From positions 186,001 through 250,000 of the IMG/VR virus record IMGVR_UViG_3300019776_000324: DNA of 64,000 bases; one strand, 5' to 3'. Within the stretch, counting starts at the first letter, position 1. The number at the start of each line of letters is the position of its first letter. Made by a program: the position numbers and the translations under genes. The notes beneath the pieces were generated by a model. That model searched no databases. It had not been told where the DNA came from and worked only from the letters and a program-made list of their open reading frames with translations. This document shows, piece after piece, positions 1 through 47,727 of this stretch.

Positions 1-210
1 GGCAACTATGGTTACAATGCCGCAACCGGTACATACGGCGACATGGTAGAACAAGGTGTTATTGATCCTACTAAAGTTACCAAGACTGCTTTGGTCAATG
101 CCGCAAGTATTGCTGGTTTGATTCTTACCACAGACTGTTCAATTGCACAGATCCCTGCCAAAGAAGGCCAGGCTCAACCGCAAATGGGTGGCATGGGCGG
201 TATGATGTAA
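1..210 (+). CDS. groL: Chaperonin GroEL, C-terminal fragment (gene starts before the window)
   Basis: Frame 1 reads [46 protein letters not shown]...QMGGMGGMM*, the GroEL C-terminus with GGM tail. Confidence 0.97.
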
Positions 211-235
211 TTAGTAGTTAATTTGTAATAAATAT

Positions 236-298
236 TACTGTGGGTGCCGATGGTCGGGCCCACAGTATTATGTCACTTGCTTAATAAAGGAGAAAACA
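236..298 (+). promoter_or_regulatory. Structured 5' leader of hsp20: hairpin plus ROSE-like anti-SD element
   Basis: Stem TACTGTGGG(236-244)/CCCACAGTA(259-267) encloses GCCGATGGTCGG; then CTTGCT-taataa-AGGAG (UYGCU opposite the SD). Second copy at 18155-18209. Confidence 0.7.
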
Positions 299-742
299 AT
301 GACAAGACTTACAACTCTGGACCTCAGTCCATTCTATCGCAACTCAATCGGTGTAGACAAATTATTTGATCGTTTGCTTGGTCAAATTGATGCTGGCGGA
401 ACTACACAGAACTATCCACCATACAATATTGTAAAAACTGGCGACAACACCTACGAGATTCAAGTAGCTGTTGCTGGCTTTACGCAGGGTGAAGTTACTG
501 TAAATGTTAACGAAGGTAATTTGATTATCACTGGTGAGAAATTATCTAAAGAATTGCCAGAAGGTCATGTGTATGAGCATCAGGGCATCAGCGCCCGTCG
601 TTTTATGCACACATTTACCTTGGCTGACTATGTAGAAGTAACTAGCGCACTAAGCAAGGACGGTATTCTTACTGTCAAGCTAGAACGCCAAGTTCCTGAA
701 GCAATGAAGCCTAAAACTATTGCGATATCATACGAATCGTAA
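299..742 (+). CDS. Small heat shock protein (Hsp20/IbpA family)
   Basis: NYPPYNI, AVAGF, HQGISARRF, DGILTVKL and C-terminal I-x-I motifs; AGGAG SD. Confidence 0.95.
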   Translation: MTRLTTLDLSPFYRNSIGVDKLFDRLLGQIDAGGTTQNYPPYNIVKTGDNTYEIQVAVAGFTQGEVTVNVNEGNLIITGEKLSKELPEGHVYEHQGISARRFMHTFTLADYVEVTSALSKDGILTVKLERQVPEAMKPKTIAISYES

Positions 743-804
743 TATAATATAGTAAATACAGTGGAGGGCATACTGCTCTCCACTATAATAACAAAGGAAC
801 TTGT

Positions 805-1113
805 ATGTCACAAGCTGGAACAGTTACAAAAATAGAAGTTAATCAAATTCTTAAAGAACCTCCAATGTTTAAGGTGATCTATCTTAACGATAATCAAACC
901 AGTATGGAATTTGTAATTGAAACTCTATTAGACTTTTTTAATTATACTCCAGACACCGCAGTAAAAATTACCCAAGATATCCACGAACAAGGATCAGCAG
1001 TGGTAGCAGTATTGCCATATGAAGTTGCTGAACAAAAAGGCATCGAAGTAACAGTAAGTGCCCGCAGTCAAAATTATCCACTACAAGTTAAACTAGAGCC
1101 AGAATCGGCTTAA
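805..1113 (+). CDS. clpS: ATP-dependent Clp protease adaptor ClpS
   Basis: EPPMFKVIYLNDNQTSMEFV...IHEQGSAVV..YEVAEQK...YPL. Confidence 0.95.
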   Translation: MSQAGTVTKIEVNQILKEPPMFKVIYLNDNQTSMEFVIETLLDFFNYTPDTAVKITQDIHEQGSAVVAVLPYEVAEQKGIEVTVSARSQNYPLQVKLEPESA

Positions 1114-1234: not shown

Positions 1235-2020
1235 TCACCTAATTTCAATACGCTTGGGATAATACGCCAGTTGAGAATACTCAGTGTCCCCACGACCTCG
1301 GCAGTTGTTTGTAAATCTAACTCCTGCAAAGTCACGGTCAACACTTTTATGATAGTGCCCAAAGCACCAAGTTTTAATTTTGTTTTCAGTATCTTCATCC
1401 AGCACTGACAACAAATGTCGATTGCCCATGCAATTAAATCTCCAGGTATCAACTAGTTCTAAATCATGATCTATAATCCATGATGCTGGCAGAGTATGAG
1501 TTACAATTATTATTGAATGTACATCTGGATGTGTTTGTAATCTAGCAACACTATTAATTAAATATACAGCATCATGATAAGCCACACCATTTATATTATT
1601 TGCTGCGGATAGAGTAATGTCATTCCTTTGTTGATACCATTCGATGGTTTGCGCAACTTCGATATTTGGATCAAAATCATAACACCACCATCCATTTGTG
1701 GCCAAGATAGCAACGCCATTGACAATAACTACATTGTCTTGCATGTAAACAACATTTGGAATATTACTAACTTGCTGAACTAACTCTTGATAGCTTGCTC
1801 CAAGATCTTCTAAAGTATAACGATGCTCATCGTTGCCATCAATATAAAATACAGCGGCATAGCATTGTCCTAAATGAGTTAGTACATCAACAAGAACACT
1901 GCGGTCTCTACACACATCTCCGGCCACGACACAATATGGGCTGGTAGCTTGTCCAGTCCAGTCGAACTCATCCCAGGTTTCGATGTGTAGGTCAGAAATT
2001 AAATCAAAGGCAAAAGTCAT
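1235..2020 (-). CDS. Calcineurin-like metallophosphoesterase
   Basis: DLH, GD, GNDEH, H and GHYH metal-binding motifs. Confidence 0.85.
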   Translation of the reverse strand: MTFAFDLISDLHIETWDEFDWTGQATSPYCVVAGDVCRDRSVLVDVLTHLGQCYAAVFYIDGNDEHRYTLEDLGASYQELVQQVSNIPNVVYMQDNVVIVNGVAILATNGWWCYDFDPNIEVAQTIEWYQQRNDITLSAANNINGVAYHDAVYLINSVARLQTHPDVHSIIIVTHTLPASWIIDHDLELVDTWRFNCMGNRHLLSVLDEDTENKIKTWCFGHYHKSVDRDFAGVRFTNNCRGRGDTEYSQLAYYPKRIEIR

Positions 2021-2045
2021 GATAACTATTTACAGGAGATTGACA

Positions 2046-2399
2046 ATGAACATAATTTTTGGTGACAATATAGCAGCACTTGAAGACAAGTACACAGTAT
2101 TAGAGTTAGATACCTTTCGTATCGGATCAGATGGTCCAGTTAATACTGCTTATTGTGTTTTGGAACTTATTCCCCTTGAAGAAATGGCTCTAGCTGAAAG
2201 TATGGTAGATTTACATCATAATCTTATGCAGGAGTACAAGAAGCGCAATTGGAACTATTGCGAGCAAGCCATGGAACAACTTATGGGCAAATGGAACGGC
2301 GAACTGGATACTTTTTATCAAGAACTAGAAAAACGCATCGGCAAGCTAAAAACCCTGGAGTTAACCAACGAATGGTCTCCTATAATTGAAAAAGTCTAA
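2046..2399 (+). CDS. Stand-alone paralogue of the C-terminal region of the adenylate cyclase at 5485-7533
   Basis: AGGAG SD before ATG 2046; aligns by eye with the last ~120 aa of the cyclase (e.g. LMGKWNGELDTFY vs LIGKFGGQMDKYY). Confidence 0.7.
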   Translation: MNIIFGDNIAALEDKYTVLELDTFRIGSDGPVNTAYCVLELIPLEEMALAESMVDLHHNLMQEYKKRNWNYCEQAMEQLMGKWNGELDTFYQELEKRIGKLKTLELTNEWSPIIEKV

Positions 2400-2424: not shown

Positions 2425-2462
2425 TCTTGCTCTAGATCCTATAAATATCAATAGGAGCGAGA
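2425..2462 (+). promoter_or_regulatory. T4-type late promoter TATAAATA (2440-2447) inside a hairpin that sequesters the csgF SD
   Basis: TCCTAT(2437-42)/ATAGGA(2451-56) and TCTTGCTC/GAGCGAGA arms flank TATAAATA. Confidence 0.65.
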
Positions 2463-2464
2463 GT

Positions 2465-2917
2465 ATGATAATAATAATAAGATTTACTCTGCTATGTATA
2501 ATTGCGATCTCCTTACAAGCCGTCGCAGTGTCAGCAGAACTGATTCATCAGTTTAACAGCCCCGCCTTCAGCGGAATTGGCTGGTCCAGTCATGTGCTAA
2601 CCATTGAGCAGATGGAAGCCGCACGGGCTCAAAAAATCAAAGACGAAAACAAGGCTGCGCAAGATAAAGCTGAGCGCGACGCTAAAAACACTAACTTGGC
2701 TAAGTTTTTAGTCAATGTGGAAAGTCGTATCTATGCACAATTATCCAAGCAACTAGCAGATGCCATGTTCAGTGATGGCGGAAATAGTGGTAACATGGAC
2801 TTTCAAGGTACAAATATCAATTGGGTTAAAACCGCAACTGATGTTACATTAACAATTACGGAAGCTGGCGGCGGTGTAACGCAGATAACAGTTCCGTTGG
2901 CGAGCTTTGCATTCTAA
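2465..2917 (+). CDS. csgF: Curli assembly protein CsgF-like
   Basis: Signal peptide, then AELIHQFNSPAFSG (cf. CsgF N-terminal FxFxNPxFGG); SRIYAQLSKQL; immediately upstream of csgG. Confidence 0.8.
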   Translation: MIIIIRFTLLCIIAISLQAVAVSAELIHQFNSPAFSGIGWSSHVLTIEQMEAARAQKIKDENKAAQDKAERDAKNTNLAKFLVNVESRIYAQLSKQLADAMFSDGGNSGNMDFQGTNINWVKTATDVTLTITEAGGGVTQITVPLASFAF

Positions 2918-3699
2918 TGAAACGGCTTGCTATACTCTTCTGCACACTAGCCCTCTCAGGTTGCGCTAATCTTCACATGATGGCCGCACAGGAAGAACCT
3001 GTGGTCGTTCAACCCAAAGAAAATTTAATGGCCAAACTACCTACACTAGAAGGCCCACCAATGACTGTAGCAGTGTATGGGTTCAAAGACCTAACTGGAC
3101 AAATGAAACCCAACGACAAACTAGCAGTATTCAGTAAGGCTGTTACGCAAGGTGCAGAAGTATTTTTAATTAAGAGTCTACAAGATTCTAGAGGATGGTT
3201 TAGAGTTGTTGAGCGTGTTGGACTTGACAACCTAATTAAAGAGCGTCAACTTATACGCAATCAGCGTGAAGTGTACGAAGGTAAAGATGCCAAAGCATTA
3301 AAGCCACTAACTGTGGCAGGTGTCTTGATTGAGGGCGGAGTTATTGGCTATGACAGCAATATACGCTCAGGTGGTAACGGTGCCAGATTTTTAGGCATCG
3401 GAGGCAGTCAACAATACAGAGTAGATGAAGTTACAGTTAGTCTTAGACTAATCAGTATTGCATCCGGCGAAGTATTGTTAACCAACGCTGTAAGTAAAAC
3501 CATTTACTCTACAGCACATGATGTAGGTGTACTAAAGTTTGTAGATAATGCAACCAAAGCATTGGAAATTGAAACTGGCACCGCATTAAATGAGCCCACG
3601 ACTTATGCAGTTCGTGTGGCCATTGAGCAGTCAGTTTACGAAATGATAGTAGACGGACAACGAAAGGGTCTTTGGAATTTTGTCCAAAGCAAAAACTAA
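2917..3699 (+). CDS. csgG: Curli secretion channel CsgG (outer-membrane lipoprotein)
   Basis: Lipobox LSGC; VAVYGFKDLTGQ, FSKAVTQG, WFRVVERVGLDNLIKERQLIR, IEGGVIGYDSNIRSGGNGARFLGIG, NEP motifs. Confidence 0.95.
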   Translation: MKRLAILFCTLALSGCANLHMMAAQEEPVVVQPKENLMAKLPTLEGPPMTVAVYGFKDLTGQMKPNDKLAVFSKAVTQGAEVFLIKSLQDSRGWFRVVERVGLDNLIKERQLIRNQREVYEGKDAKALKPLTVAGVLIEGGVIGYDSNIRSGGNGARFLGIGGSQQYRVDEVTVSLRLISIASGEVLLTNAVSKTIYSTAHDVGVLKFVDNATKALEIETGTALNEPTTYAVRVAIEQSVYEMIVDGQRKGLWNFVQSKN

Positions 3700-3700
3700 A

Positions 3701-4321
3701 ATGAAATCAAGTATGACAAGCGTTTGTAAGTTGCTGAGTAAATTACTTACTGTAGTAGGAATCGTAGCCATGGGTAGTGCGATGGCCAATGAAGTTTATG
3801 TCGAGCAAGTAGGCAGTGGATCTACAATTAACATATTACAAGAAGGTTCTGATAATAGAATTGGCACAAGTTTATCGCCAGCCTATATTGGGTCTGGATC
3901 TAATACAGTTAATATTGATCAAATTGGTGCCAACAATACCTTAGACATGGTGGTTAATGGATCATCAACAGATGTTACAGTATCAACCACTGGTAGTAAT
4001 AACACTCAAGAGATTCAGTGCGGTACGACTGGGTCATCTGGTTGCGGTGGTAGTGTAATTACTCAAACCATTACAGGAGATAACAATACTGTACGACAAC
4101 TGCTAGGTGCTGGTGCCAATCATACCAGTAATATTGCAGTAACAGGTGATACCAATACTGTTACTCATACTAGTACTGCCACAGGCACAACCTCGGCAGA
4201 TATTACTGTAACAGGAAACACTAATACAGTAGCAGTTACTCAATCAGGAATGTTGAATCATAGTGTCACGGTTAATAGTAGCGGTAACCTTAATAACATT
4301 AGCATTATTCAGCGAGACTAG
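3701..4321 (+). CDS. Secreted curlin-like (CsgA/CsgB-type) beta-solenoid repeat protein
   Basis: Signal peptide ending AMA-NE; repeated (Q/T)-x-G-x-x-N strands rich in G/S/N/T/Q; lies directly after csgG. Confidence 0.75.
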   Translation: MKSSMTSVCKLLSKLLTVVGIVAMGSAMANEVYVEQVGSGSTINILQEGSDNRIGTSLSPAYIGSGSNTVNIDQIGANNTLDMVVNGSSTDVTVSTTGSNNTQEIQCGTTGSSGCGGSVITQTITGDNNTVRQLLGAGANHTSNIAVTGDTNTVTHTSTATGTTSADITVTGNTNTVAVTQSGMLNHSVTVNSSGNLNNISIIQRD

Positions 4322-5348
4322 TATATCAGCGGTAGGGAAAGTTACAGAACAAACTGGCCCTACCGAGATAGTTAGAAACAAAAAGTCCTCGCCGAGTGCG
4401 GTTAATGCGCCAGTCGAAATGAACGACACTATCATTACGGCCAAGGCAAAGGCAAAATTAACATTTGAAGATAACACCACAATAAACATTACAGAACAAA
4501 GTAAAGTATTGATTGATGACTTTGTTTATGATCCAAAGAACAAAGATGCTGGCAAACTGTCAATGAAGATGGTACAAGGTACAGCTCGATATGCGTCAGG
4601 ACAGATTGCTAAAAACAATCCTCAGGCAGTAAACATACAAACACCCACAGCTACAGTAGCAGTGCGTGGCACAGATTTCTCAATGACAGTAGATGAACTA
4701 GGTCGTAGTCTTGTTATGTTGTTACCAAGTTGCGATAAGAAAGGTTGTGTTACTGGAGCAATTAGTGTGAGTAATGAAGCTGGTACAGTATTTCTTGATG
4801 TGGCATTTCAGGCCACATTAGTTACTAGTATTTCAGTACCGCCACAGGCACCAGTAATAGTAACTATTGATACTGCTAACATTAATAACTTGTTGATTGT
4901 TAGCCCTCCTAAGGAAGTAGTTAAAGACACAAATGAAAACTCTCAGAAAACTGCACTTGATATAAACTTCTTAAACAAAGATCTACTCAAGTACAATGAA
5001 TTAGATAAAAACGAATTGGAAAAATTTAGATCCTTGGACATTAACTTTTTAGATGTAGACTTATTGGTAAACCTATTAGACCTAAGCACTGCACAACTAT
5101 CAGCCAGTCAAGAACAACTGTCTAACGAAGCTTCGTTGTTACCAAAGTATTCGCCAGCTTCTGGAATAACTTACTATTTTAGTGATGACGAAAGTAAAGT
5201 AATTCTTCGTAAAGTTACCACACATATTGCAGAAGTTACTGTACCTGTAGACCACGATGTTGTAATTAATATCACGCAGGATGGTACAGCAGTAACACAG
5301 CAAGTCAATCGCGGTGGAACATCAGTTATCAATATCATTCAGCGTTAG
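4263..5348 (+). CDS. Exported FecR-domain protein
   Basis: Signal peptide; VGKVTE..G, DTIIT, LTFEDNTTINITEQSKVLIDDFVYDP, TPTATVAVRGTDF motifs. Confidence 0.85.
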   Translation: MSRLIVAVTLITLALFSETSISAVGKVTEQTGPTEIVRNKKSSPSAVNAPVEMNDTIITAKAKAKLTFEDNTTINITEQSKVLIDDFVYDPKNKDAGKLSMKMVQGTARYASGQIAKNNPQAVNIQTPTATVAVRGTDFSMTVDELGRSLVMLLPSCDKKGCVTGAISVSNEAGTVFLDVAFQATLVTSISVPPQAPVIVTIDTANINNLLIVSPPKEVVKDTNENSQKTALDINFLNKDLLKYNELDKNELEKFRSLDINFLDVDLLVNLLDLSTAQLSASQEQLSNEASLLPKYSPASGITYYFSDDESKVILRKVTTHIAEVTVPVDHDVVINITQDGTAVTQQVNRGGTSVINIIQR

Positions 5349-5441
5349 CTCCTGAGTAAGTATGCCGTTTATATTTTACGATTAATTCTTAAATAGAATG
5401 CAGGCATTATAACTAAAACAAGCCGGCTACGAAGGATTTTT

Positions 5442-5472
5442 AAGTACCCACTTTATTGTGGGTATTTTTTTC
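5442..5472 (+). terminator. Intrinsic terminator after the FecR gene
   Basis: TACCCAC-tttatt-GTGGGTA followed by a T-tract. Confidence 0.65.
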
Positions 5473-5484
5473 ATTAAATACTCT

Positions 5485-7533
5485 ATGCTTAAAAAAATAA
5501 TAACAAGTCCTTGGACAGCATTACTAACATTGGCACTAGTAGTTGGATTGCGTGTAGCAGATCCTACTTTTGTTGAAAGCGTTCGTCTGCGCTACTTTGA
5601 CACACTAGTAACTAGTAAACCTGCAGAGGTCATTGGAGTTAGTGTTGTAAACATAGACGAGAAAGCCTTAGAAAAATATGGTCAATTCCCTTTCAGTCGC
5701 GATATCTACGCTTCCGTTATTCGAGAACTTTATCGTCGTAACGCTGGTCTGGTGGTTTTTAATATTCTTACTCCTGATCGCGATCGTATGGGTCAGGATC
5801 AATCTTATATCCAAGCACTCAGACAGTTCCCAACCATCCTACCTAGTATTGGATCTACACAAACAAGAAACCAACCAAGAAACCCAGGAACGATTATAAT
5901 TGGACCATACCAAAATCAAATAGTTACATATCCTGGAATTATTGCCAACATACCTGCTGTTGAAAATGCAGCTGCTGGAGTTGGAATTGTAAACACTTTT
6001 CCAGAAGTTGACGGAGTAGTAAGACGCATGCCGTTGGTAGTAATGAGCGATCAAAAACTTTATCCTGGTATGGCCATGGAAGTGTTGCGTGTAGCAGCAG
6101 GAGACTCGACATTCCAGGTTAAACTAAACGAGAATGGTGTAGAGAAAATGCGCATTCCAAAGTTTGGACCTATTGCTACTGATAGTTTAAGTCGTATTTG
6201 GATTGACTGGAGTTTGGTTCCGGACAAGTATAGTTTAACCAATCTGCCAGATGATTTTGAAGGTGAAATAGTTATTGTGGGTGTGTCAGCCCAAGGATTA
6301 AGTAATCCAGTAGCAACAAGCATGGGTGAAATGCTACCACAAGATTTACAAGCAGCAGTATTAGGCACAGTAATAGCAAATAAAGATCGACCTGCTATCA
6401 CTCGCCCAGATTGGGCCGATGGCGCTGAAATTATATTTGTGTTAGTGGCAGGTATTTTATTATTATTTTTATCAAGGTGGGTTTATGTTGGACTTTGTGC
6501 ATCTGTTGTTATACTCGGCGGGAGTTTACTATTTTCTAGTTGGGCTTATGGAAGTCTCGCTTGGCTTGTGGACGCAACTGTTCCGGTCGCTGGTCTTGTC
6601 ATTGTGCTTCTTCATGCTTATGGTGTTAAGTTTGTAAGTGAGTTCTTACAGAAGCAAGCGATCAAGAAACAGTTTGCTGGCTACTGCTCTAAAGAAGTTG
6701 TGGATATGTTGCAGAAGGATCCAGACTTGATCAAGCGTGGTGTGCGTAAGGATGTAAGTGTTATGTTTAGTGACCTGCGTGGCTTTACTCCTATTGGTGA
6801 ACACTACGGTGATGATGTTGCTGGACTTGGCAAGTACATGAACGGCTATATGGATGCTATTAGTCAGCCTATCATGGACAACAAAGGCATGGTTATCAAG
6901 TATGTAGGAGATGCAAGTATGCATATTCACGGTGCTCCTATTGAAGATCCTAATCACGCAAGAACAATCGTTGCTGTCGGTCTACAAATGTTAGATGCTG
7001 TAGACGAGTACACTAAGCTAATGGAAGCACAAGGCTTACCTCCTGCGGCAATGGGCTGGGGTTGTAACTCGGGCATTGGCTTTATTGGCGAAATGGGAAG
7101 CACAGATAGACACAGCTATGACATTTTAGGTGATATGGTTAGTACGGCGGCACGATTAGAAGCTCGTTGCAAAGCATATGGTGTACTATGTATTATTGGT
7201 GCTGAAACTTACAATCGTACCAAAGATGATTTCTTCTACCTGTTGTTAGATAACTTACAACCAAAAGGTAAAACTGTGGCAGACTTGATCTACACAGTAT
7301 TACGCACCAAAGGCGCAGACTACACCAAAGAACTATCAACACATAACAAGATGCATGCATTATACAAAGAGAAAAATTTTGATGCGGCCGCTATCTTATG
7401 TGGAGAATTAATTGGTAAGTTTGGCGGACAAATGGACAAGTACTATAAGATTTGGATCGAGCGTTGCGAGTTTATGAAAGAACAGAACTTACCAGAAAAC
7501 TGGAATGGTGAATTTGTAGCGCACGAAAAATAA
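5485..7533 (+). CDS. CHASE2-domain membrane-bound class III adenylate/guanylate cyclase
   Basis: N-terminal TM; CHASE2 (IDEKALEKYGQFPFSR, DGVVRRMPL); three TMs; cyclase motifs MFSDLRGFT, KYVGDA, GEMGS, YDILGDMVSTAARLE. Start placed at ATG 5485 (ORF track 5458). Confidence 0.92.
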   Translation: MLKKIITSPWTALLTLALVVGLRVADPTFVESVRLRYFDTLVTSKPAEVIGVSVVNIDEKALEKYGQFPFSRDIYASVIRELYRRNAGLVVFNILTPDRDRMGQDQSYIQALRQFPTILPSIGSTQTRNQPRNPGTIIIGPYQNQIVTYPGIIANIPAVENAAAGVGIVNTFPEVDGVVRRMPLVVMSDQKLYPGMAMEVLRVAAGDSTFQVKLNENGVEKMRIPKFGPIATDSLSRIWIDWSLVPDKYSLTNLPDDFEGEIVIVGVSAQGLSNPVATSMGEMLPQDLQAAVLGTVIANKDRPAITRPDWADGAEIIFVLVAGILLLFLSRWVYVGLCASVVILGGSLLFSSWAYGSLAWLVDATVPVAGLVIVLLHAYGVKFVSEFLQKQAIKKQFAGYCSKEVVDMLQKDPDLIKRGVRKDVSVMFSDLRGFTPIGEHYGDDVAGLGKYMNGYMDAISQPIMDNKGMVIKYVGDASMHIHGAPIEDPNHARTIVAVGLQMLDAVDEYTKLMEAQGLPPAAMGWGCNSGIGFIGEMGSTDRHSYDILGDMVSTAARLEARCKAYGVLCIIGAETYNRTKDDFFYLLLDNLQPKGKTVADLIYTVLRTKGADYTKELSTHNKMHALYKEKNFDAAAILCGELIGKFGGQMDKYYKIWIERCEFMKEQNLPENWNGEFVAHEK

Positions 7534-7534
7534 T

Positions 7535-7948
7535 CTAATTTACAGGCACACGAAGATGCACAGCTATGGCGCTGGCACCACCTGCATTAACTTGTGGAAT
7601 AGCGATAGCACATAGATAACTGTAACAAACTTCAGGAAATGCCATGGGTGCAATCTTGTAGGAATTATATCCTGTTACTAGTCCAGCACCAATGCCTATG
7701 TCCCAAGGCCCGTCCTTATATAAAGCATAACGAGCATAACCATAGGTGCTGCCACGATACTCGCTATTGCGATACCAACCACCAGCAACTGACCAACTGT
7801 CTGTAATAGTTTGTTCAAGGCCTGCTCCGTAATTAAATCCATTGAACCCAGGGCGGTCATGCACACTGGCTCCGTTGACTTGGATATATGTTTCTGCTAA
7901 TGATAGATTGCATACTGCTATTAACAGCATAGCTACAAGTGTTTTCAC
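7535..7948 (-). CDS. Small outer-membrane beta-barrel, PagP-like
   Basis: Signal peptide; SVH..FNGFNYGAGLE, GGWYRNSEYRGSTY, GAGLVTGY pattern of alternating beta-strands. Confidence 0.55.
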   Translation of the reverse strand: MKTLVAMLLIAVCNLSLAETYIQVNGASVHDRPGFNGFNYGAGLEQTITDSWSVAGGWYRNSEYRGSTYGYARYALYKDGPWDIGIGAGLVTGYNSYKIAPMAFPEVCYSYLCAIAIPQVNAGGASAIAVHLRVPVN

Positions 7949-46467: not shown

Positions 46468-46479
46468 TATAAATACGTG

Positions 46480-47727
46480 ATGATATATACCCGGCAACAA
46501 TTTTTAAAACAGTTTAAACTAAACAAAAATATTAGTTATACAGACTTTTGCTCAAAGATTGCTGTTCTCAACGGCAGTGATACTTCTGGGCAATTTGTTA
46601 CTCGCAGTGACTTGGATACCTTTGTTAAGAAGAACGCAACCAAAGACAATCGTGTCAGTAGGCTAGACGATTACAAGAAGAAACTGTACCAAGTGCTGGT
46701 TACAGATGCAGATGAAGCACTAGGACAGTGGTTTGACCGTACTGCTGCTATCTCTGAAAATATTGATTATTATTTTCAACTTCCAAATGCCAGCATACTT
46801 GAAGACAAGACATTTGCTGGGCGCACACATTCCAAGTATGGTCGCTTGTGTAAGAATATAAACTTTGAGCAGTTCTTCAACACACGCAAACTATACTCCA
46901 ATGACTTTGAATATACATTTGGCTTGATGCGAGCCATGTTTGAAGATTTTAAAATTCGTAATAGTTTGGTTGGCCCTGCTATGTTTGATCATATATGCCG
47001 TATAGAAGATCGTAACTACGGGCAGTTCTGGACTGACTTTATGATGGGGTGTAATCGTGCAAGCGTATTCAATCCTGTAACATATCGTGGCATACTAGAT
47101 GAACTATTGCCAGGAGAAACATTGTTTGCACCTGTTATGGGTTGGAATAGCTATCAGCTGGCATTTTATAACAGTCACTTTAAACATTTTGTAGCTACTG
47201 ATGTGATTCCAGAAGTAGTCAACAATGGAAAGAAATTACACCAAGAGTGGTTAGCGTATAAAGATCGCAGTTTATTTGAACTAGAGGACAAGACTGTTAA
47301 GTTATATTGTTCGCCCAGCGAAGAGCTAGCAAAGGGCACAGACTTTGTGGCTATGTATCAAGGTCAAGTTGATGCGGTGTTGTTTAGTCCACCATACTTT
47401 GACTTAGAGATATATCCCAGTGCTGACCAAAGTTTTACTAACTATCCCAACTATCAAGATTGGTTATTGAACTATTGGGAAGCTACAGTTAAGACAGCTA
47501 AACAAGTTCTCAAACCTGGCGGCCGCTTTGCTTTTGTAATTAGTAACTATCGTAACAAGGCCAAACAAGAAGTCGCTATTAGCCAAGACATGCGAGATAT
47601 AGTTGAATTACATTTAGGTAAACCTACACACTATAAAGTACAGTGGTCTGCTATTGCTGGAGGTCGACAAGCTATGAAAACTAGAGATGGTAATTTTGAA
47701 GATCTCTGGTTATTTGAAAAGGATTAA
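46480..47727 (+). CDS. DNA amino-methyltransferase (N4-C/N6-A type)
   Basis: Degenerate motif I FAPVMGWNS, ATDV, catalytic SPPYF, LKPGG. Confidence 0.75.
   Translation: MIYTRQQFLKQFKLNKNISYTDFCSKIAVLNGSDTSGQFVTRSDLDTFVKKNATKDNRVSRLDDYKKKLYQVLVTDADEALGQWFDRTAAISENIDYYFQLPNASILEDKTFAGRTHSKYGRLCKNINFEQFFNTRKLYSNDFEYTFGLMRAMFEDFKIRNSLVGPAMFDHICRIEDRNYGQFWTDFMMGCNRASVFNPVTYRGILDELLPGETLFAPVMGWNSYQLAFYNSHFKHFVATDVIPEVVNNGKKLHQEWLAYKDRSLFELEDKTVKLYCSPSEELAKGTDFVAMYQGQVDAVLFSPPYFDLEIYPSADQSFTNYPNYQDWLLNYWEATVKTAKQVLKPGGRFAFVISNYRNKAKQEVAISQDMRDIVELHLGKPTHYKVQWSAIAGGRQAMKTRDGNFEDLWLFEKD

What the first reader, a model, noticed from the sequence alone, without database searches (positions are those of the whole stretch)
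2046..2399. Stand-alone copy of the cyclase's C-terminal region, placed at the head of the locus
Seen: this 117-aa ORF aligns by eye along its whole length with the last ~120 aa of the cyclase. IIFGDNIAALEDKYTVLELD...AYCVL matches IIGAETYNRTKDDFFYLLLD...IYTVL. HHNLMQEYKKRNW...QLMGKWNGELDTFY...RI...L..EW matches HNKMHALYKEKNF...ELIGKFGGQMDKYY...RC...LPENW. It lacks all catalytic motifs but has its own SD and is divergent from the phosphoesterase gene. Inference: class III cyclases work as dimers, so this may be a trans-acting inhibitor, decoy or adaptor for the phage cyclase or for host cyclases (possibly immune-signalling ones).
Basis: partly seen in the sequence, partly recalled or inferred. 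Interest (0 to 1): 0.75.

Follow-up and report, generated by a model that had tools for sequence, protein, structure and literature searches.

The report
Stand-alone cyclase-tail protein in jumbo phages
A 117-residue phage protein is a true but ancient, non-catalytic, stand-alone relative of the last ~115 residues of CHASE2-type nucleotide cyclases. It is a conserved gene of a whole group of ~340 kb aquatic jumbo phages, and most of them have no cyclase, so it is unlikely to be a dedicated regulator of the phage's own cyclase.

Summary
ORF 2046-2399 (117 aa, start MNIIF, AGGAG 7 nt upstream) is homologous along its whole length to residues 567-680 of the 682-aa CHASE2 cyclase (5485-7533). Profile-profile E is 1.8e-15. 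Secondary-structure elements match one to one. Foldseek hits the C-terminal ~115 residues of many cyclases (TM 0.70-0.78).

The sequence signal lies mostly in the helical second half; the first 48 residues are not significant alone.

It is not a decaying duplicate. There are more than 1,250 90%-identity clusters, all about 100-125 aa, with intact frames and dN/dS about 0.1-0.25. Nor is it a recent copy of the resident cyclase, because the family forms its own long branch.

In 80 related loci it sits in a fixed block, Hsp20-ClpS-(metallophosphoesterase, opposite strand)-small gene. The curli-FecR-cyclase cassette follows in only a minority. Five of nine genomes at least 90% complete have no cyclase.

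The same module ends bacterial CHASE2 cyclases of about 750 aa.

The fragment has no catalytic residues and none of the segments I take to form the dimer interface. So "dimerisation decoy for the phage cyclase" is not supported, and a host target remains open. The function is unknown. My best guess is a neofunctionalised binding module.

The parts
2046..2399 (+). Small gene, 117 aa plus stop: a stand-alone homologue of the cyclase's last strand-helix-strand-strand unit plus its helical tail.
   Evidence: More than 1,257 homologous 90%-identity clusters. dN/dS is about 0.1-0.25.
2034..2038 (+). AGGAG ribosome-binding site, 7 nt upstream of the ATG.
   Evidence: Read directly from the sequence. 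An AAGGA/AGGAG-like motif is conserved at this place in relatives.
2021..2045 (.). 25-nt spacer between the divergent start codons of the phosphoesterase gene and the small gene. It is strongly conserved at the DNA level, with consensus about GATA(A/C)(C/A)TATTTA(C/A)A..GGA.
   Evidence: 58 distinct relatives were aligned. The spacing is 24-26 nt in most loci.
1235..2020 (-). Metallophosphoesterase gene (261 aa), divergently transcribed, with all five metallophosphoesterase motifs intact. It is the constant neighbour of the small gene.
   Evidence: PHROG 1649 at E = 3.6e-23. Motif residues are invariant. Adjacent in 77 of 80 and 72 of 75 loci. The substrate is unknown: the CpdA match is E = 0.038, not significant.
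299..1113 (+). Hsp20 (299-742) and ClpS (805-1113), the upstream part of the conserved block that carries the small gene.
   Evidence: Present next to the small gene in 80 of 80 loci.
7183..7524 (+). Segment of the cyclase gene (residues 567-680 of 682) that is homologous to the whole small protein.
   Evidence: hhalign results. Matching secondary structure in the cyclase model.
5485..7533 (+). CHASE2 class III nucleotide cyclase, 682 aa from the ATG at 5485. The ORF listing begins the frame at the GTG at 5458.
   Evidence: Pfam CHASE2 and Guanylate_cyc. Database homologues are 680-684 aa. The best solved relatives are Cya2, CyaC and CyaB, matching the catalytic domain only.
2465..5348 (+). 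CsgF (2465-2917), CsgG (2917-3699), a curlin-repeat protein (3680-4321) and a FecR-domain protein (4263-5348). With the cyclase these form an accessory cassette also found in Melnitz and HTVC008M.
   Evidence: PMC9004378.

Best explanation
**What it is (well supported).** The gene encodes a small soluble protein derived from the 3' end of a CHASE2-type class III nucleotide cyclase gene. It corresponds to the last strand-helix-strand-strand unit of the catalytic domain plus the roughly 75-residue helical C-terminal extension and final short strand. It keeps the residues that are invariant in that module in cyclases: Asp22, Tyr64, Tyr91, Arg97 and Trp110. These may be what holds the module together, but no contacts were examined. 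It has none of the catalytic residues.

It is an old, separately evolving family and a conserved gene of a group of about 340 kb aquatic jumbo phages. It always sits at the end of the Hsp20-ClpS-phosphoesterase block. When the curli-FecR-cyclase cassette is present, it lies just downstream.

**Likely origin (inferred).** A partial duplication of the cassette's cyclase in an ancestor of these phages, followed by repeated loss of the cassette while the small gene was kept.

**How it works (inferred, about 40% as worded).** It acts as a non-enzymatic binding module whose function no longer depends on the phage cyclase. The rigid sheet-plus-helices scaffold would present family-specific conserved surfaces that cyclases lack:
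- the invariant N-terminal strand;
- the E40-x-x-P43-x-x-E46 loop;
- His57, Trp69, Cys72 and Trp83.

The partner is unknown. Candidates, in my order of preference, are a host protein (about 25% that it is a host class III cyclase), the neighbouring phosphoesterase (about 20%), or another phage protein.
For: **Homology and fold:**

**The module ends bacterial cyclases.** It is the normal C-terminus of bacterial CHASE2 cyclases of 740-776 aa. The family profile matched 8 of 401 genomes of one phylum. Every match lies at the end of a long open frame (740-776 aa in eight, 3,314 aa in one), except the one on a phage-like contig. One such cyclase sits in a plainly bacterial STAS/SpoIIE neighbourhood.

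**Shared invariant residues and the W-(D/N)-G-V ending** in some family members.

**Selection:** dN/dS is 0.08-0.25 for most pairs with dS < 1. Frames are intact in all 80 loci.

**Distribution:** Hsp20-ClpS-phosphoesterase-small block in 77 of 80 loci. Cyclase is absent from 5 of 9 near-complete genomes.

**Link to the cassette.** A shorter subfamily (104-109 aa) sits directly upstream of csgF, with the cyclase downstream and no phosphoesterase. This ties the gene historically to the cassette.

**Family-specific conserved positions:**

**Helical half.** It weakly resembles TPR-like protein-binding hairpins (Z 5-6, within noise).
Against: - No direct evidence of any binding partner. The complex prediction with the cyclase catalytic region and the phosphoesterase scored 0.00, which the tool says is no evidence either way.
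- The origin from the cassette cyclase is not resolved by the tree. The small family is one long branch that joins an unresolved node among the cyclases.
- Melnitz and HTVC008M carry the cassette without this gene.
- Conserved adjacency to the phosphoesterase may simply reflect general synteny in this lineage. ClpS and Hsp20 are just as constant.
- Expression is not shown. Metatranscriptome contigs from relatives touch 1973-2126, but DNA carry-over cannot be excluded.
Confidence: 0.55

Rival explanations
1. Trans-acting modulator of class III cyclases. The free module would bind a cyclase, either the phage's or the host's, and change cNMP output. It could do this by competing with the enzyme's own C-terminal extension or by mimicking it.
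For: - The module is homologous to the C-terminal extension of CHASE2 cyclases.
- In the CHASE2 cyclase Cya2, the native 118-aa C-terminal extension substantially raises activity and affects the linker region (PMC5995499). Cya2 is the closest solved catalytic domain to the phage cyclase.
- Where the cassette exists, the small gene lies just upstream of it.
Against: - Five of nine near-complete genomes with the small gene lack a cyclase, so at most a host cyclase could be the general target.
- The fragment also carries its own copy of strands beta6-beta8. A complete catalytic domain already has these, so it cannot dock the way the tail does within one chain.
- By my recollection of published class III structures, the dimer interface lies in parts the fragment lacks.
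- No support from the complex prediction (not evidence).
- No match to Pycsar cyclase models.
- Homology of the Cya2 extension to this tail was not tested here.
Confidence: 0.2
2. Partner or regulator of the divergently transcribed metallophosphoesterase. The two genes would form a functional pair sharing a 25-nt control region.
For: - Adjacent and divergent in 77 of 80 and 72 of 75 loci, with 24-26 nt spacing.
- The spacer is conserved at the DNA level among relatives whose small proteins are only about 41-60% identical.
- The phosphoesterase has intact catalytic motifs.
Against: - The small gene persists where the phosphoesterase is missing: L064, L078, L089, L112.
- In the short subfamily the neighbours are Rv2179c-like, CTP_transf_like or GGACT proteins instead.
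- The complex prediction gave no support (not evidence).
- The whole region is syntenic, so adjacency carries little weight.
Confidence: 0.15
3. Decaying or functionless remnant of a partial gene duplication.
For: It is a gene fragment by origin, with no catalytic residues and no database annotation.
Against: - More than 1,257 90%-identity clusters and 427 50%-identity clusters, all about 100-125 aa.
- Uninterrupted frames in all 80 loci; dN/dS well below 1.
- 19 invariant positions among the 39 aligned members, which are 53-86% identical to the window's protein.
- Confident compact predicted fold, pLDDT 89.5.
Confidence: 0.02

Closest known systems
C-terminal extension of CHASE2-type class III cyclases (bacterial enzymes of about 750 aa; phage cyclases of Melnitz and the jumbo phages)
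   Same: Collinear homology over the whole small protein. Same predicted secondary structure and fold. Shared invariant Asp, Tyr, Tyr, Arg and Trp. A W-(D/N)-G-V ending is kept in some members.
   Different: It is stand-alone rather than fused to a catalytic domain. It lacks the KGK loop. It has its own conserved positions (N-terminal strand, E-x-x-P-x-x-E loop, His57, Trp69, Cys72, Trp83). It forms a separate long branch.
Cya2 of Synechocystis PCC 6803: its 118-aa C-terminal extension (PMC5995499)
   Same: Cya2 is a CHASE2-regulated cyclase whose catalytic domain is the best solved match to the phage cyclase (6FHT and 2W01). Its extension follows the catalytic domain, has no solved structure, and stimulates activity.
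   Different: It acts within one polypeptide.
Curli-FecR-cyclase cassette of Methylophilales phage Melnitz and Pelagibacter phage HTVC008M
   Same: Same gene order: CsgF, CsgG, curlin repeat, FecR, CHASE2 cyclase. The Melnitz cyclase is 44.7% identical and carries the same tail.
   Different: Those T4-like phages have no homologue of the small gene. The HTVC008M cyclase (611 aa) shows no match to the small-protein family profile.
AdvA of Acinetobacter baumannii, a non-catalytic cyclase-like domain (PMC13060281)
   Same: It is a precedent for a protein with a cyclase-derived fold that has lost the active-site residues and the dimerisation arm and does something else.
   Different: AdvA has a whole cyclase-like domain in a membrane protein. 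This is only the C-terminal quarter plus the tail. No relationship between the two was tested.

Membership tests
Class III nucleotide cyclase catalytic domain (Pfam PF00211) | Match to the family model above its curated cut-off | tested here: not met
   No Pfam family at E <= 0.01, and nothing relevant at E <= 10.
Class III nucleotide cyclase catalytic domain (Pfam PF00211) | Two metal-binding aspartates, the substrate-specifying residues, and the transition-state Asn/Arg helix | tested here: not met
   The small protein aligns only to cyclase residues 567-680, downstream of all these positions.
Class III nucleotide cyclase catalytic domain (Pfam PF00211) | K-G-K loop between the last two strands | tested here: not met
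   K-G-K is invariant in the cyclase alignment. The small family has a variable loop there instead.
Class III nucleotide cyclase catalytic domain (Pfam PF00211) | Fold of the last strand-helix-strand-strand unit | tested here: met
   Foldseek alignments over residues 3-117 to cyclase C-termini, TM 0.70-0.78. Element-for-element match with the cyclase model.
C-terminal extension module of CHASE2-type cyclases (no database name) | Collinear sequence homology to the helical tail | tested here: met
   hhalign E = 1.8e-15. The C-half profile alone hits 13 cyclases. It also matches the Melnitz and bacterial tails.
C-terminal extension module of CHASE2-type cyclases (no database name) | Invariant Asp, Tyr, Tyr, Arg and Trp of the module | tested here: met
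   D22, Y64, Y91, R97 and W110 are invariant in the small family. They align with the invariant D195, Y233, Y260, R266 and W279 of the cyclase alignment.
C-terminal extension module of CHASE2-type cyclases (no database name) | Covalent attachment to a catalytic domain, ending in W-(D/N)-G-V-x-x-x-x-K | tested here: not met
   It is a stand-alone 117-aa gene. The Trp is kept, D-G-V occurs only in some members, and the terminal S/T-K is absent. The short subfamily lacks the whole last segment.
TPR/Sel1-like repeat proteins | Match to repeat models or a clear structural match | tested here: inconclusive
   No Pfam hit. VIA-align best Z is 5.9 to TPR-like hairpins over residues about 45-107, within the tool's stated noise range.
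Pycsar cyclase (PycC) or other defence-system proteins | Match to PADLOC models | tested here: not met
   No PADLOC family for the small protein. Only the cyclase's catalytic domain matches PycC models.

The most novel reading that the evidence does not exclude
A phage counter-signalling protein. A free copy of the regulatory C-terminal module of class III cyclases would bind host cyclases of the same kind, housekeeping or immune, and switch their cNMP output during infection. That would explain why it is kept in phages that have no cyclase of their own.
Probability: 0.12. Interest if true: 0.8.

Novelty: new variant of a known kind. Interest (0 to 1): 0.5.

Why it matters
It defines a large, unannotated phage protein family with no Pfam, PHROG, NCBIfam or PADLOC match. 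It gives that family an evolutionary identity: a free-standing, catalytically empty piece of a class III cyclase.

It also draws attention to a conserved C-terminal module that is predicted in many bacterial cyclases and that no solved structure matched by Foldseek covers. In Cya2, a C-terminal extension in the same position is known to boost activity. A small, well-folding, stand-alone version would be a convenient handle for solving that module's structure and testing what it binds.

For the phages, it separates a conserved gene of the lineage from the accessory curli-cyclase cassette beside it.

Tried and rejected
**Database searches on the small protein**
- Foldseek against solved structures: nothing (best E = 0.48).
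- VIA-align wide search: only noise-level TPR-like matches.
- Pfam, PHROGs, NCBIfam and PADLOC: no family.
- tblastn against 50,697 deposited phage genomes: no match.

**Searches for relatives elsewhere**
- Small ORFs upstream of csgF in Melnitz and HTVC008M were tested as hidden homologues. None is.
- The scan of bacterial genomes found only two contigs, both with the phage block, so these are probably phage contigs binned into MAGs.
- The second IMG/VR scan, meant to reach the short subfamily, returned the main lineage again.

**Function and origin**
- Complex prediction of cyclase 395-682 plus phosphoesterase plus small protein: score 0.00, no answer.
- The idea that the phosphoesterase is a cAMP phosphodiesterase: the CpdA match is E = 0.038, not significant.
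- The tree could not place the origin of the family among the cyclases.

**Expression**
- Metatranscriptome contigs from relatives cover only scraps of the gene start, so expression is not shown.
- Sigma-70-type promoter scan around the gene: only consensus matches inside coding sequence, uninformative.

It was rerun without that row.

Full report
**Setting.**
- The window is bases 186001-250000 of a 344,244-bp virus record with direct terminal repeats, estimated complete.
- Its left end encodes the C-terminus of GroEL, then Hsp20 (299-742) and ClpS (805-1113).
- A metallophosphoesterase gene follows on the minus strand (1235-2020), then the small ORF (2046-2399).
- Downstream lie CsgF, CsgG, a curlin-repeat protein, a FecR-domain protein and a CHASE2 class III cyclase.
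- Database homologues of the cyclase are 680-684 aa, so I take the ATG at 5485 as its start. Cyclase residue numbers below follow this 682-aa form.

**The ORF.**
- The family alignment fixes the start at MNIIF (2046). The longer frame from 1983 is not conserved.
- AGGAG at 2034-2038 lies 7 nt upstream of the ATG.
- The phosphoesterase start codon is at 2018-2020 on the other strand. This leaves a 25-nt spacer.

**Is the similarity to the cyclase real?** Yes.
- BLASTP finds 25% identity over 55 residues of the helical second half, E = 2e-6 for that one comparison.
- In the whole phage genome the only other match of the small protein is the cyclase, E = 5.7e-4.
- A 39-member family profile aligns with an alignment of phage cyclases at 94% probability and E = 1.3e-7 over 102 columns.
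- With a more diverse cyclase alignment (phage and bacterial) it aligns at 98.5% and E = 1.8e-15. Small residues 1-117 pair with cyclase residues 567-680.
- The profile also matches the tail of the Melnitz cyclase (E = 6.5e-6).
- It matches the full C-terminal 117 residues of a bacterial CHASE2 cyclase (E = 1.2e-5).
- Conversely, the window's cyclase used as query against related jumbo-phage genomes matches their small genes over cyclase residues 563-678. E values per genome run from 6e-8 to 5e-4.

**Caveat on the first half.**
- A profile of residues 1-48 alone does not reach significance against cyclases. Its best hit is E = 0.057. Its two top hits outside the family are cyclases in the right register.
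- A profile of residues 49-117 alone hits 13 cyclases at E = 7e-9 to 6e-3.
- The first half therefore rests on collinearity and on structure.

**Structure.**
- AlphaFold2 with the family alignment gives a confident compact model (pLDDT 89.5, pTM 0.82).
  - Its elements are strand 2-5, helix 9-13, strands 17-26 and 32-39, helices 44-47, 50-65, 69-79 and 88-102, and strand 114-116.
- The model of cyclase residues 395-682 (pLDDT 86.7) ends with the same series at the aligned positions.
  - These are strand 175-178, helix 179-185, strands 190-198 and 206-212, helices 220-234, 238-248 and 257-270, and strand 283-284.
- Foldseek against AlphaFold DB clusters returns one family member first. After it come about 25 cyclases (CHASE2, GAF, response-regulator and other architectures) among the next 29 hits.
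  - These are aligned over query residues 3-117, mostly to the last ~115 residues of the hit. TM by query is 0.70-0.78 for most.
- The ESM Atlas search gives the same picture: viral and bacterial cyclases with dCache, HAMP, GAF or CHASE2/Sel1 sensor domains.
- No solved structure matches the small protein.
- The cyclase model matches solved cyclases only over about 200 of its 288 residues. The best matches are Cya2, CyaC and CyaB. No solved structure among those matches covers the tail.

**What part of the cyclase is it?**
- In the bacterial example, Pfam's cyclase model covers residues 492-668 (profile positions 7-178 of 183). The small protein aligns to residues 635-748.
- So roughly the first 35 residues correspond to the end of the catalytic domain. 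By my count of the model's elements these are beta6, alpha5, beta7 and beta8. The rest corresponds to the tail.
- All catalytic residues lie upstream of this segment. The K-G-K loop, invariant in cyclases, is not conserved in the small family.
- Five positions invariant in the cyclase module are invariant in the small family: Asp22, Tyr64, Tyr91, Arg97 and Trp110.
- Some members keep the cyclases' W-(D/N)-G-V ending.
- The family also has conserved positions of its own: the N-terminal strand, E40, P43, E46, H57, W69, C72 and W83.

**Not a decaying copy.**
- The word-indexed search found 1,257 90%-identity clusters. The 120 listed are mostly 115-126 aa.
- The exhaustive profile search found 427 50%-identity clusters. 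The 150 listed are 73-144 aa, most about 100-125 aa.
- All 80 fetched loci carry an uninterrupted frame. Four were flagged for a non-ATG start, at least one being TTG.
- Pairwise dN/dS (Nei-Gojobori) is 0.08-0.25 for most pairs with dS below 1.

**Not a recent copy of the resident cyclase.**
- Identity to its own cyclase tail is 19%. This is no higher than to other phage tails (up to 31%) or bacterial tails (14-27%).
- In a maximum-likelihood tree the small family is one clade with 100/100 support, on a long branch.
- The window's cyclase tail groups with other phage cyclases. The attachment point of the small family is unresolved.

**Genomic distribution.**
- In 80 IMG/VR loci, Hsp20 and ClpS precede the small gene in all 80.
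- The phosphoesterase is the divergent neighbour in 77 of the 80.
- CsgG, FecR or a full cyclase lies within 10 kb in only 6 to 8 of the 80.
- A second scan, partly of the same contigs, gave 72 of 75 loci with the phosphoesterase.
- Nine genomes carrying the small gene are at least 90% complete.
  - Four have the cyclase: the window's genome, G005, G408 and G410.
  - Five do not: G001, G002, G003, G409 and G411.
- When the cassette is present it usually follows the small gene closely.
- A shorter subfamily (104-109 aa) lacks the last segment including Trp110.
  - It sits directly upstream of csgF in the order Hsp20, ClpS, (CTP_transf_like), Rv2179c-like, (GGACT), small gene, CsgF, CsgG, curlin, FecR, cyclase.
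  - That arrangement has no phosphoesterase.
- The T4-like phages Melnitz and HTVC008M carry the cassette without any homologue of the small gene.
- In 401 bacterial genomes of one phylum the family profile matched eight.
  - Every match lies at the end of a long open frame (740-776 aa in eight, 3,314 aa in one), except the one on a phage-like contig.
  - No stand-alone copy was found in the bacteria searched.
- Two MAG contigs with the gene carry the phage block.

**Reading of the history (inferred).**
- The position of the small gene, between ClpS and its variable neighbours on one side and csgF on the other, recurs in both subfamilies.
- The simplest account is an ancestral arrangement with the small gene next to the cassette. 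The gene would have arisen there by partial duplication of the cyclase's 3' end.
- The cassette would later have been lost repeatedly while the small gene was kept.
- The alternative is a cassette that inserts repeatedly at this spot. That is not excluded.

**Function.**
- *Published lead.* For Cya2, including the native 118-aa C-terminal extension substantially raised cyclase activity and altered hydrogen-exchange in the linker region. Its structure is unknown (PMC5995499).
  - I could not test whether that extension is homologous to the module here.
- *Against a dedicated role with the phage cyclase.* The gene is kept in phages that have no cyclase.
- *Against a dimerisation decoy.* By my recollection of published class III structures, the fragment lacks the parts that form the dimer interface.
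  - It also duplicates strands that a complete catalytic domain already has. So it cannot dock as the tail does within one chain.
- *Complex prediction.* The job with the cyclase catalytic region and the phosphoesterase gave no answer.
- *The phosphoesterase.* It has intact motifs but no assignable substrate.
- *Conclusion.* I conclude that this is a neofunctionalised binding module with an unknown partner. I rank a host target, the neighbouring phosphoesterase and other phage proteins in that order, all at low confidence.

**Novelty.**
- The family is unannotated in Pfam, PHROGs, NCBIfam and PADLOC.
- A stand-alone derivative of the cyclase C-terminal module did not turn up in the databases searched or in my limited literature searches.
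- The nearest idea is non-catalytic cyclase-like domains such as AdvA (PMC13060281). That protein has a whole cyclase-like domain.
- I rate this a new variant of a known kind, of moderate interest until a partner or phenotype is found.

Noticed in passing
window 2021-2045, and the same place in L010-L089: The 25-nt spacer between the divergent start codons is conserved at the DNA level, with consensus about GATA(A/C)(C/A)TATTTA(C/A)A..GGA. This holds across relatives whose small proteins are only about 41-60% identical. On the minus strand it reads T(T/G)TAAATA about 6 nt before the phosphoesterase ATG, close to the T4 late-promoter consensus TATAAATA (from memory). That could mean a near-leaderless transcript.
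   Followed up: partly
window 2440-2447 and 46468-46475: An exact TATAAATA lies 17 nt upstream of the csgF start codon. There are only two copies in the 64 kb window against 5.9 expected by chance. The other copy ends 1 nt before the GTG start of ORF 46477-47727. This may be a late-type promoter separating the curli cassette from the small gene.
   Followed up: partly
window 5485-7533, cyclase residues about 550-557: In the window-type phage cyclases the conserved G-D-x-V-N-x-A-x-R motif reads G-D-M-V-S-T-A-A-R. The transition-state Asn is replaced by Ser. The L072 phage cyclase and the bacterial CHASE2 cyclases keep Asn. The metal-binding Asp residues are kept. Activity or chemistry may differ.
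   Followed up: partly
window 43-1113; L003 1-7188: This is a phage-encoded proteostasis block: the GroEL C-terminus, Hsp20 and ClpS in the window, and in relatives also a ClpX-like ATPase, ribosomal protein S21 and GroES upstream.
   Followed up: no
window 2465-7533; L008; L009: The CsgF-CsgG-curlin-FecR-CHASE2 cyclase cassette is shared with the T4-like phages Melnitz (cyclase 44.7% identical) and HTVC008M (35%). It is therefore exchanged between very different marine phage lineages. Its role is debated in PMC9004378.
   Followed up: partly
L177-L180 (e.g. L180 6001-6315): A shorter subfamily of the small protein (104-109 aa) ends soon after the conserved Arg and lacks the final strand and Trp. 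It sits directly upstream of csgF, after Rv2179c-like, CTP_transf_like or GGACT genes instead of the phosphoesterase. In one 1.4 kb contig the upstream gene is a YfbR-like HD hydrolase.
   Followed up: partly
L090 (Haliscomenobacter MAG contig) and L091/L093 ('Enterobacteriaceae' MAG contig): Contigs carrying the small gene are binned into bacterial MAGs. L090 shows the ORF layout of the phage block (ORF sizes matching Hsp20, ClpS and the phosphoesterase, then the small gene). The L091 context was not examined. This is probably mis-binning of phage DNA, but it could hint at the host.
   Followed up: partly
L010 (cyclase at about +5.3 kb from the small gene): The tail of this jumbo phage's cyclase groups with bacterial cyclase tails rather than with the other phage cyclases (support 88/90). 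It also matches the small-family profile least well (E = 2e-4). This suggests a replaced or divergent 3' end.
   Followed up: no
window 7535-7948 (-): A 137-aa ORF lies immediately downstream of the cyclase on the opposite strand. It has a hydrophobic, signal-like N-terminus and a Gly/Tyr-rich sequence. There is no Pfam match.
   Followed up: no
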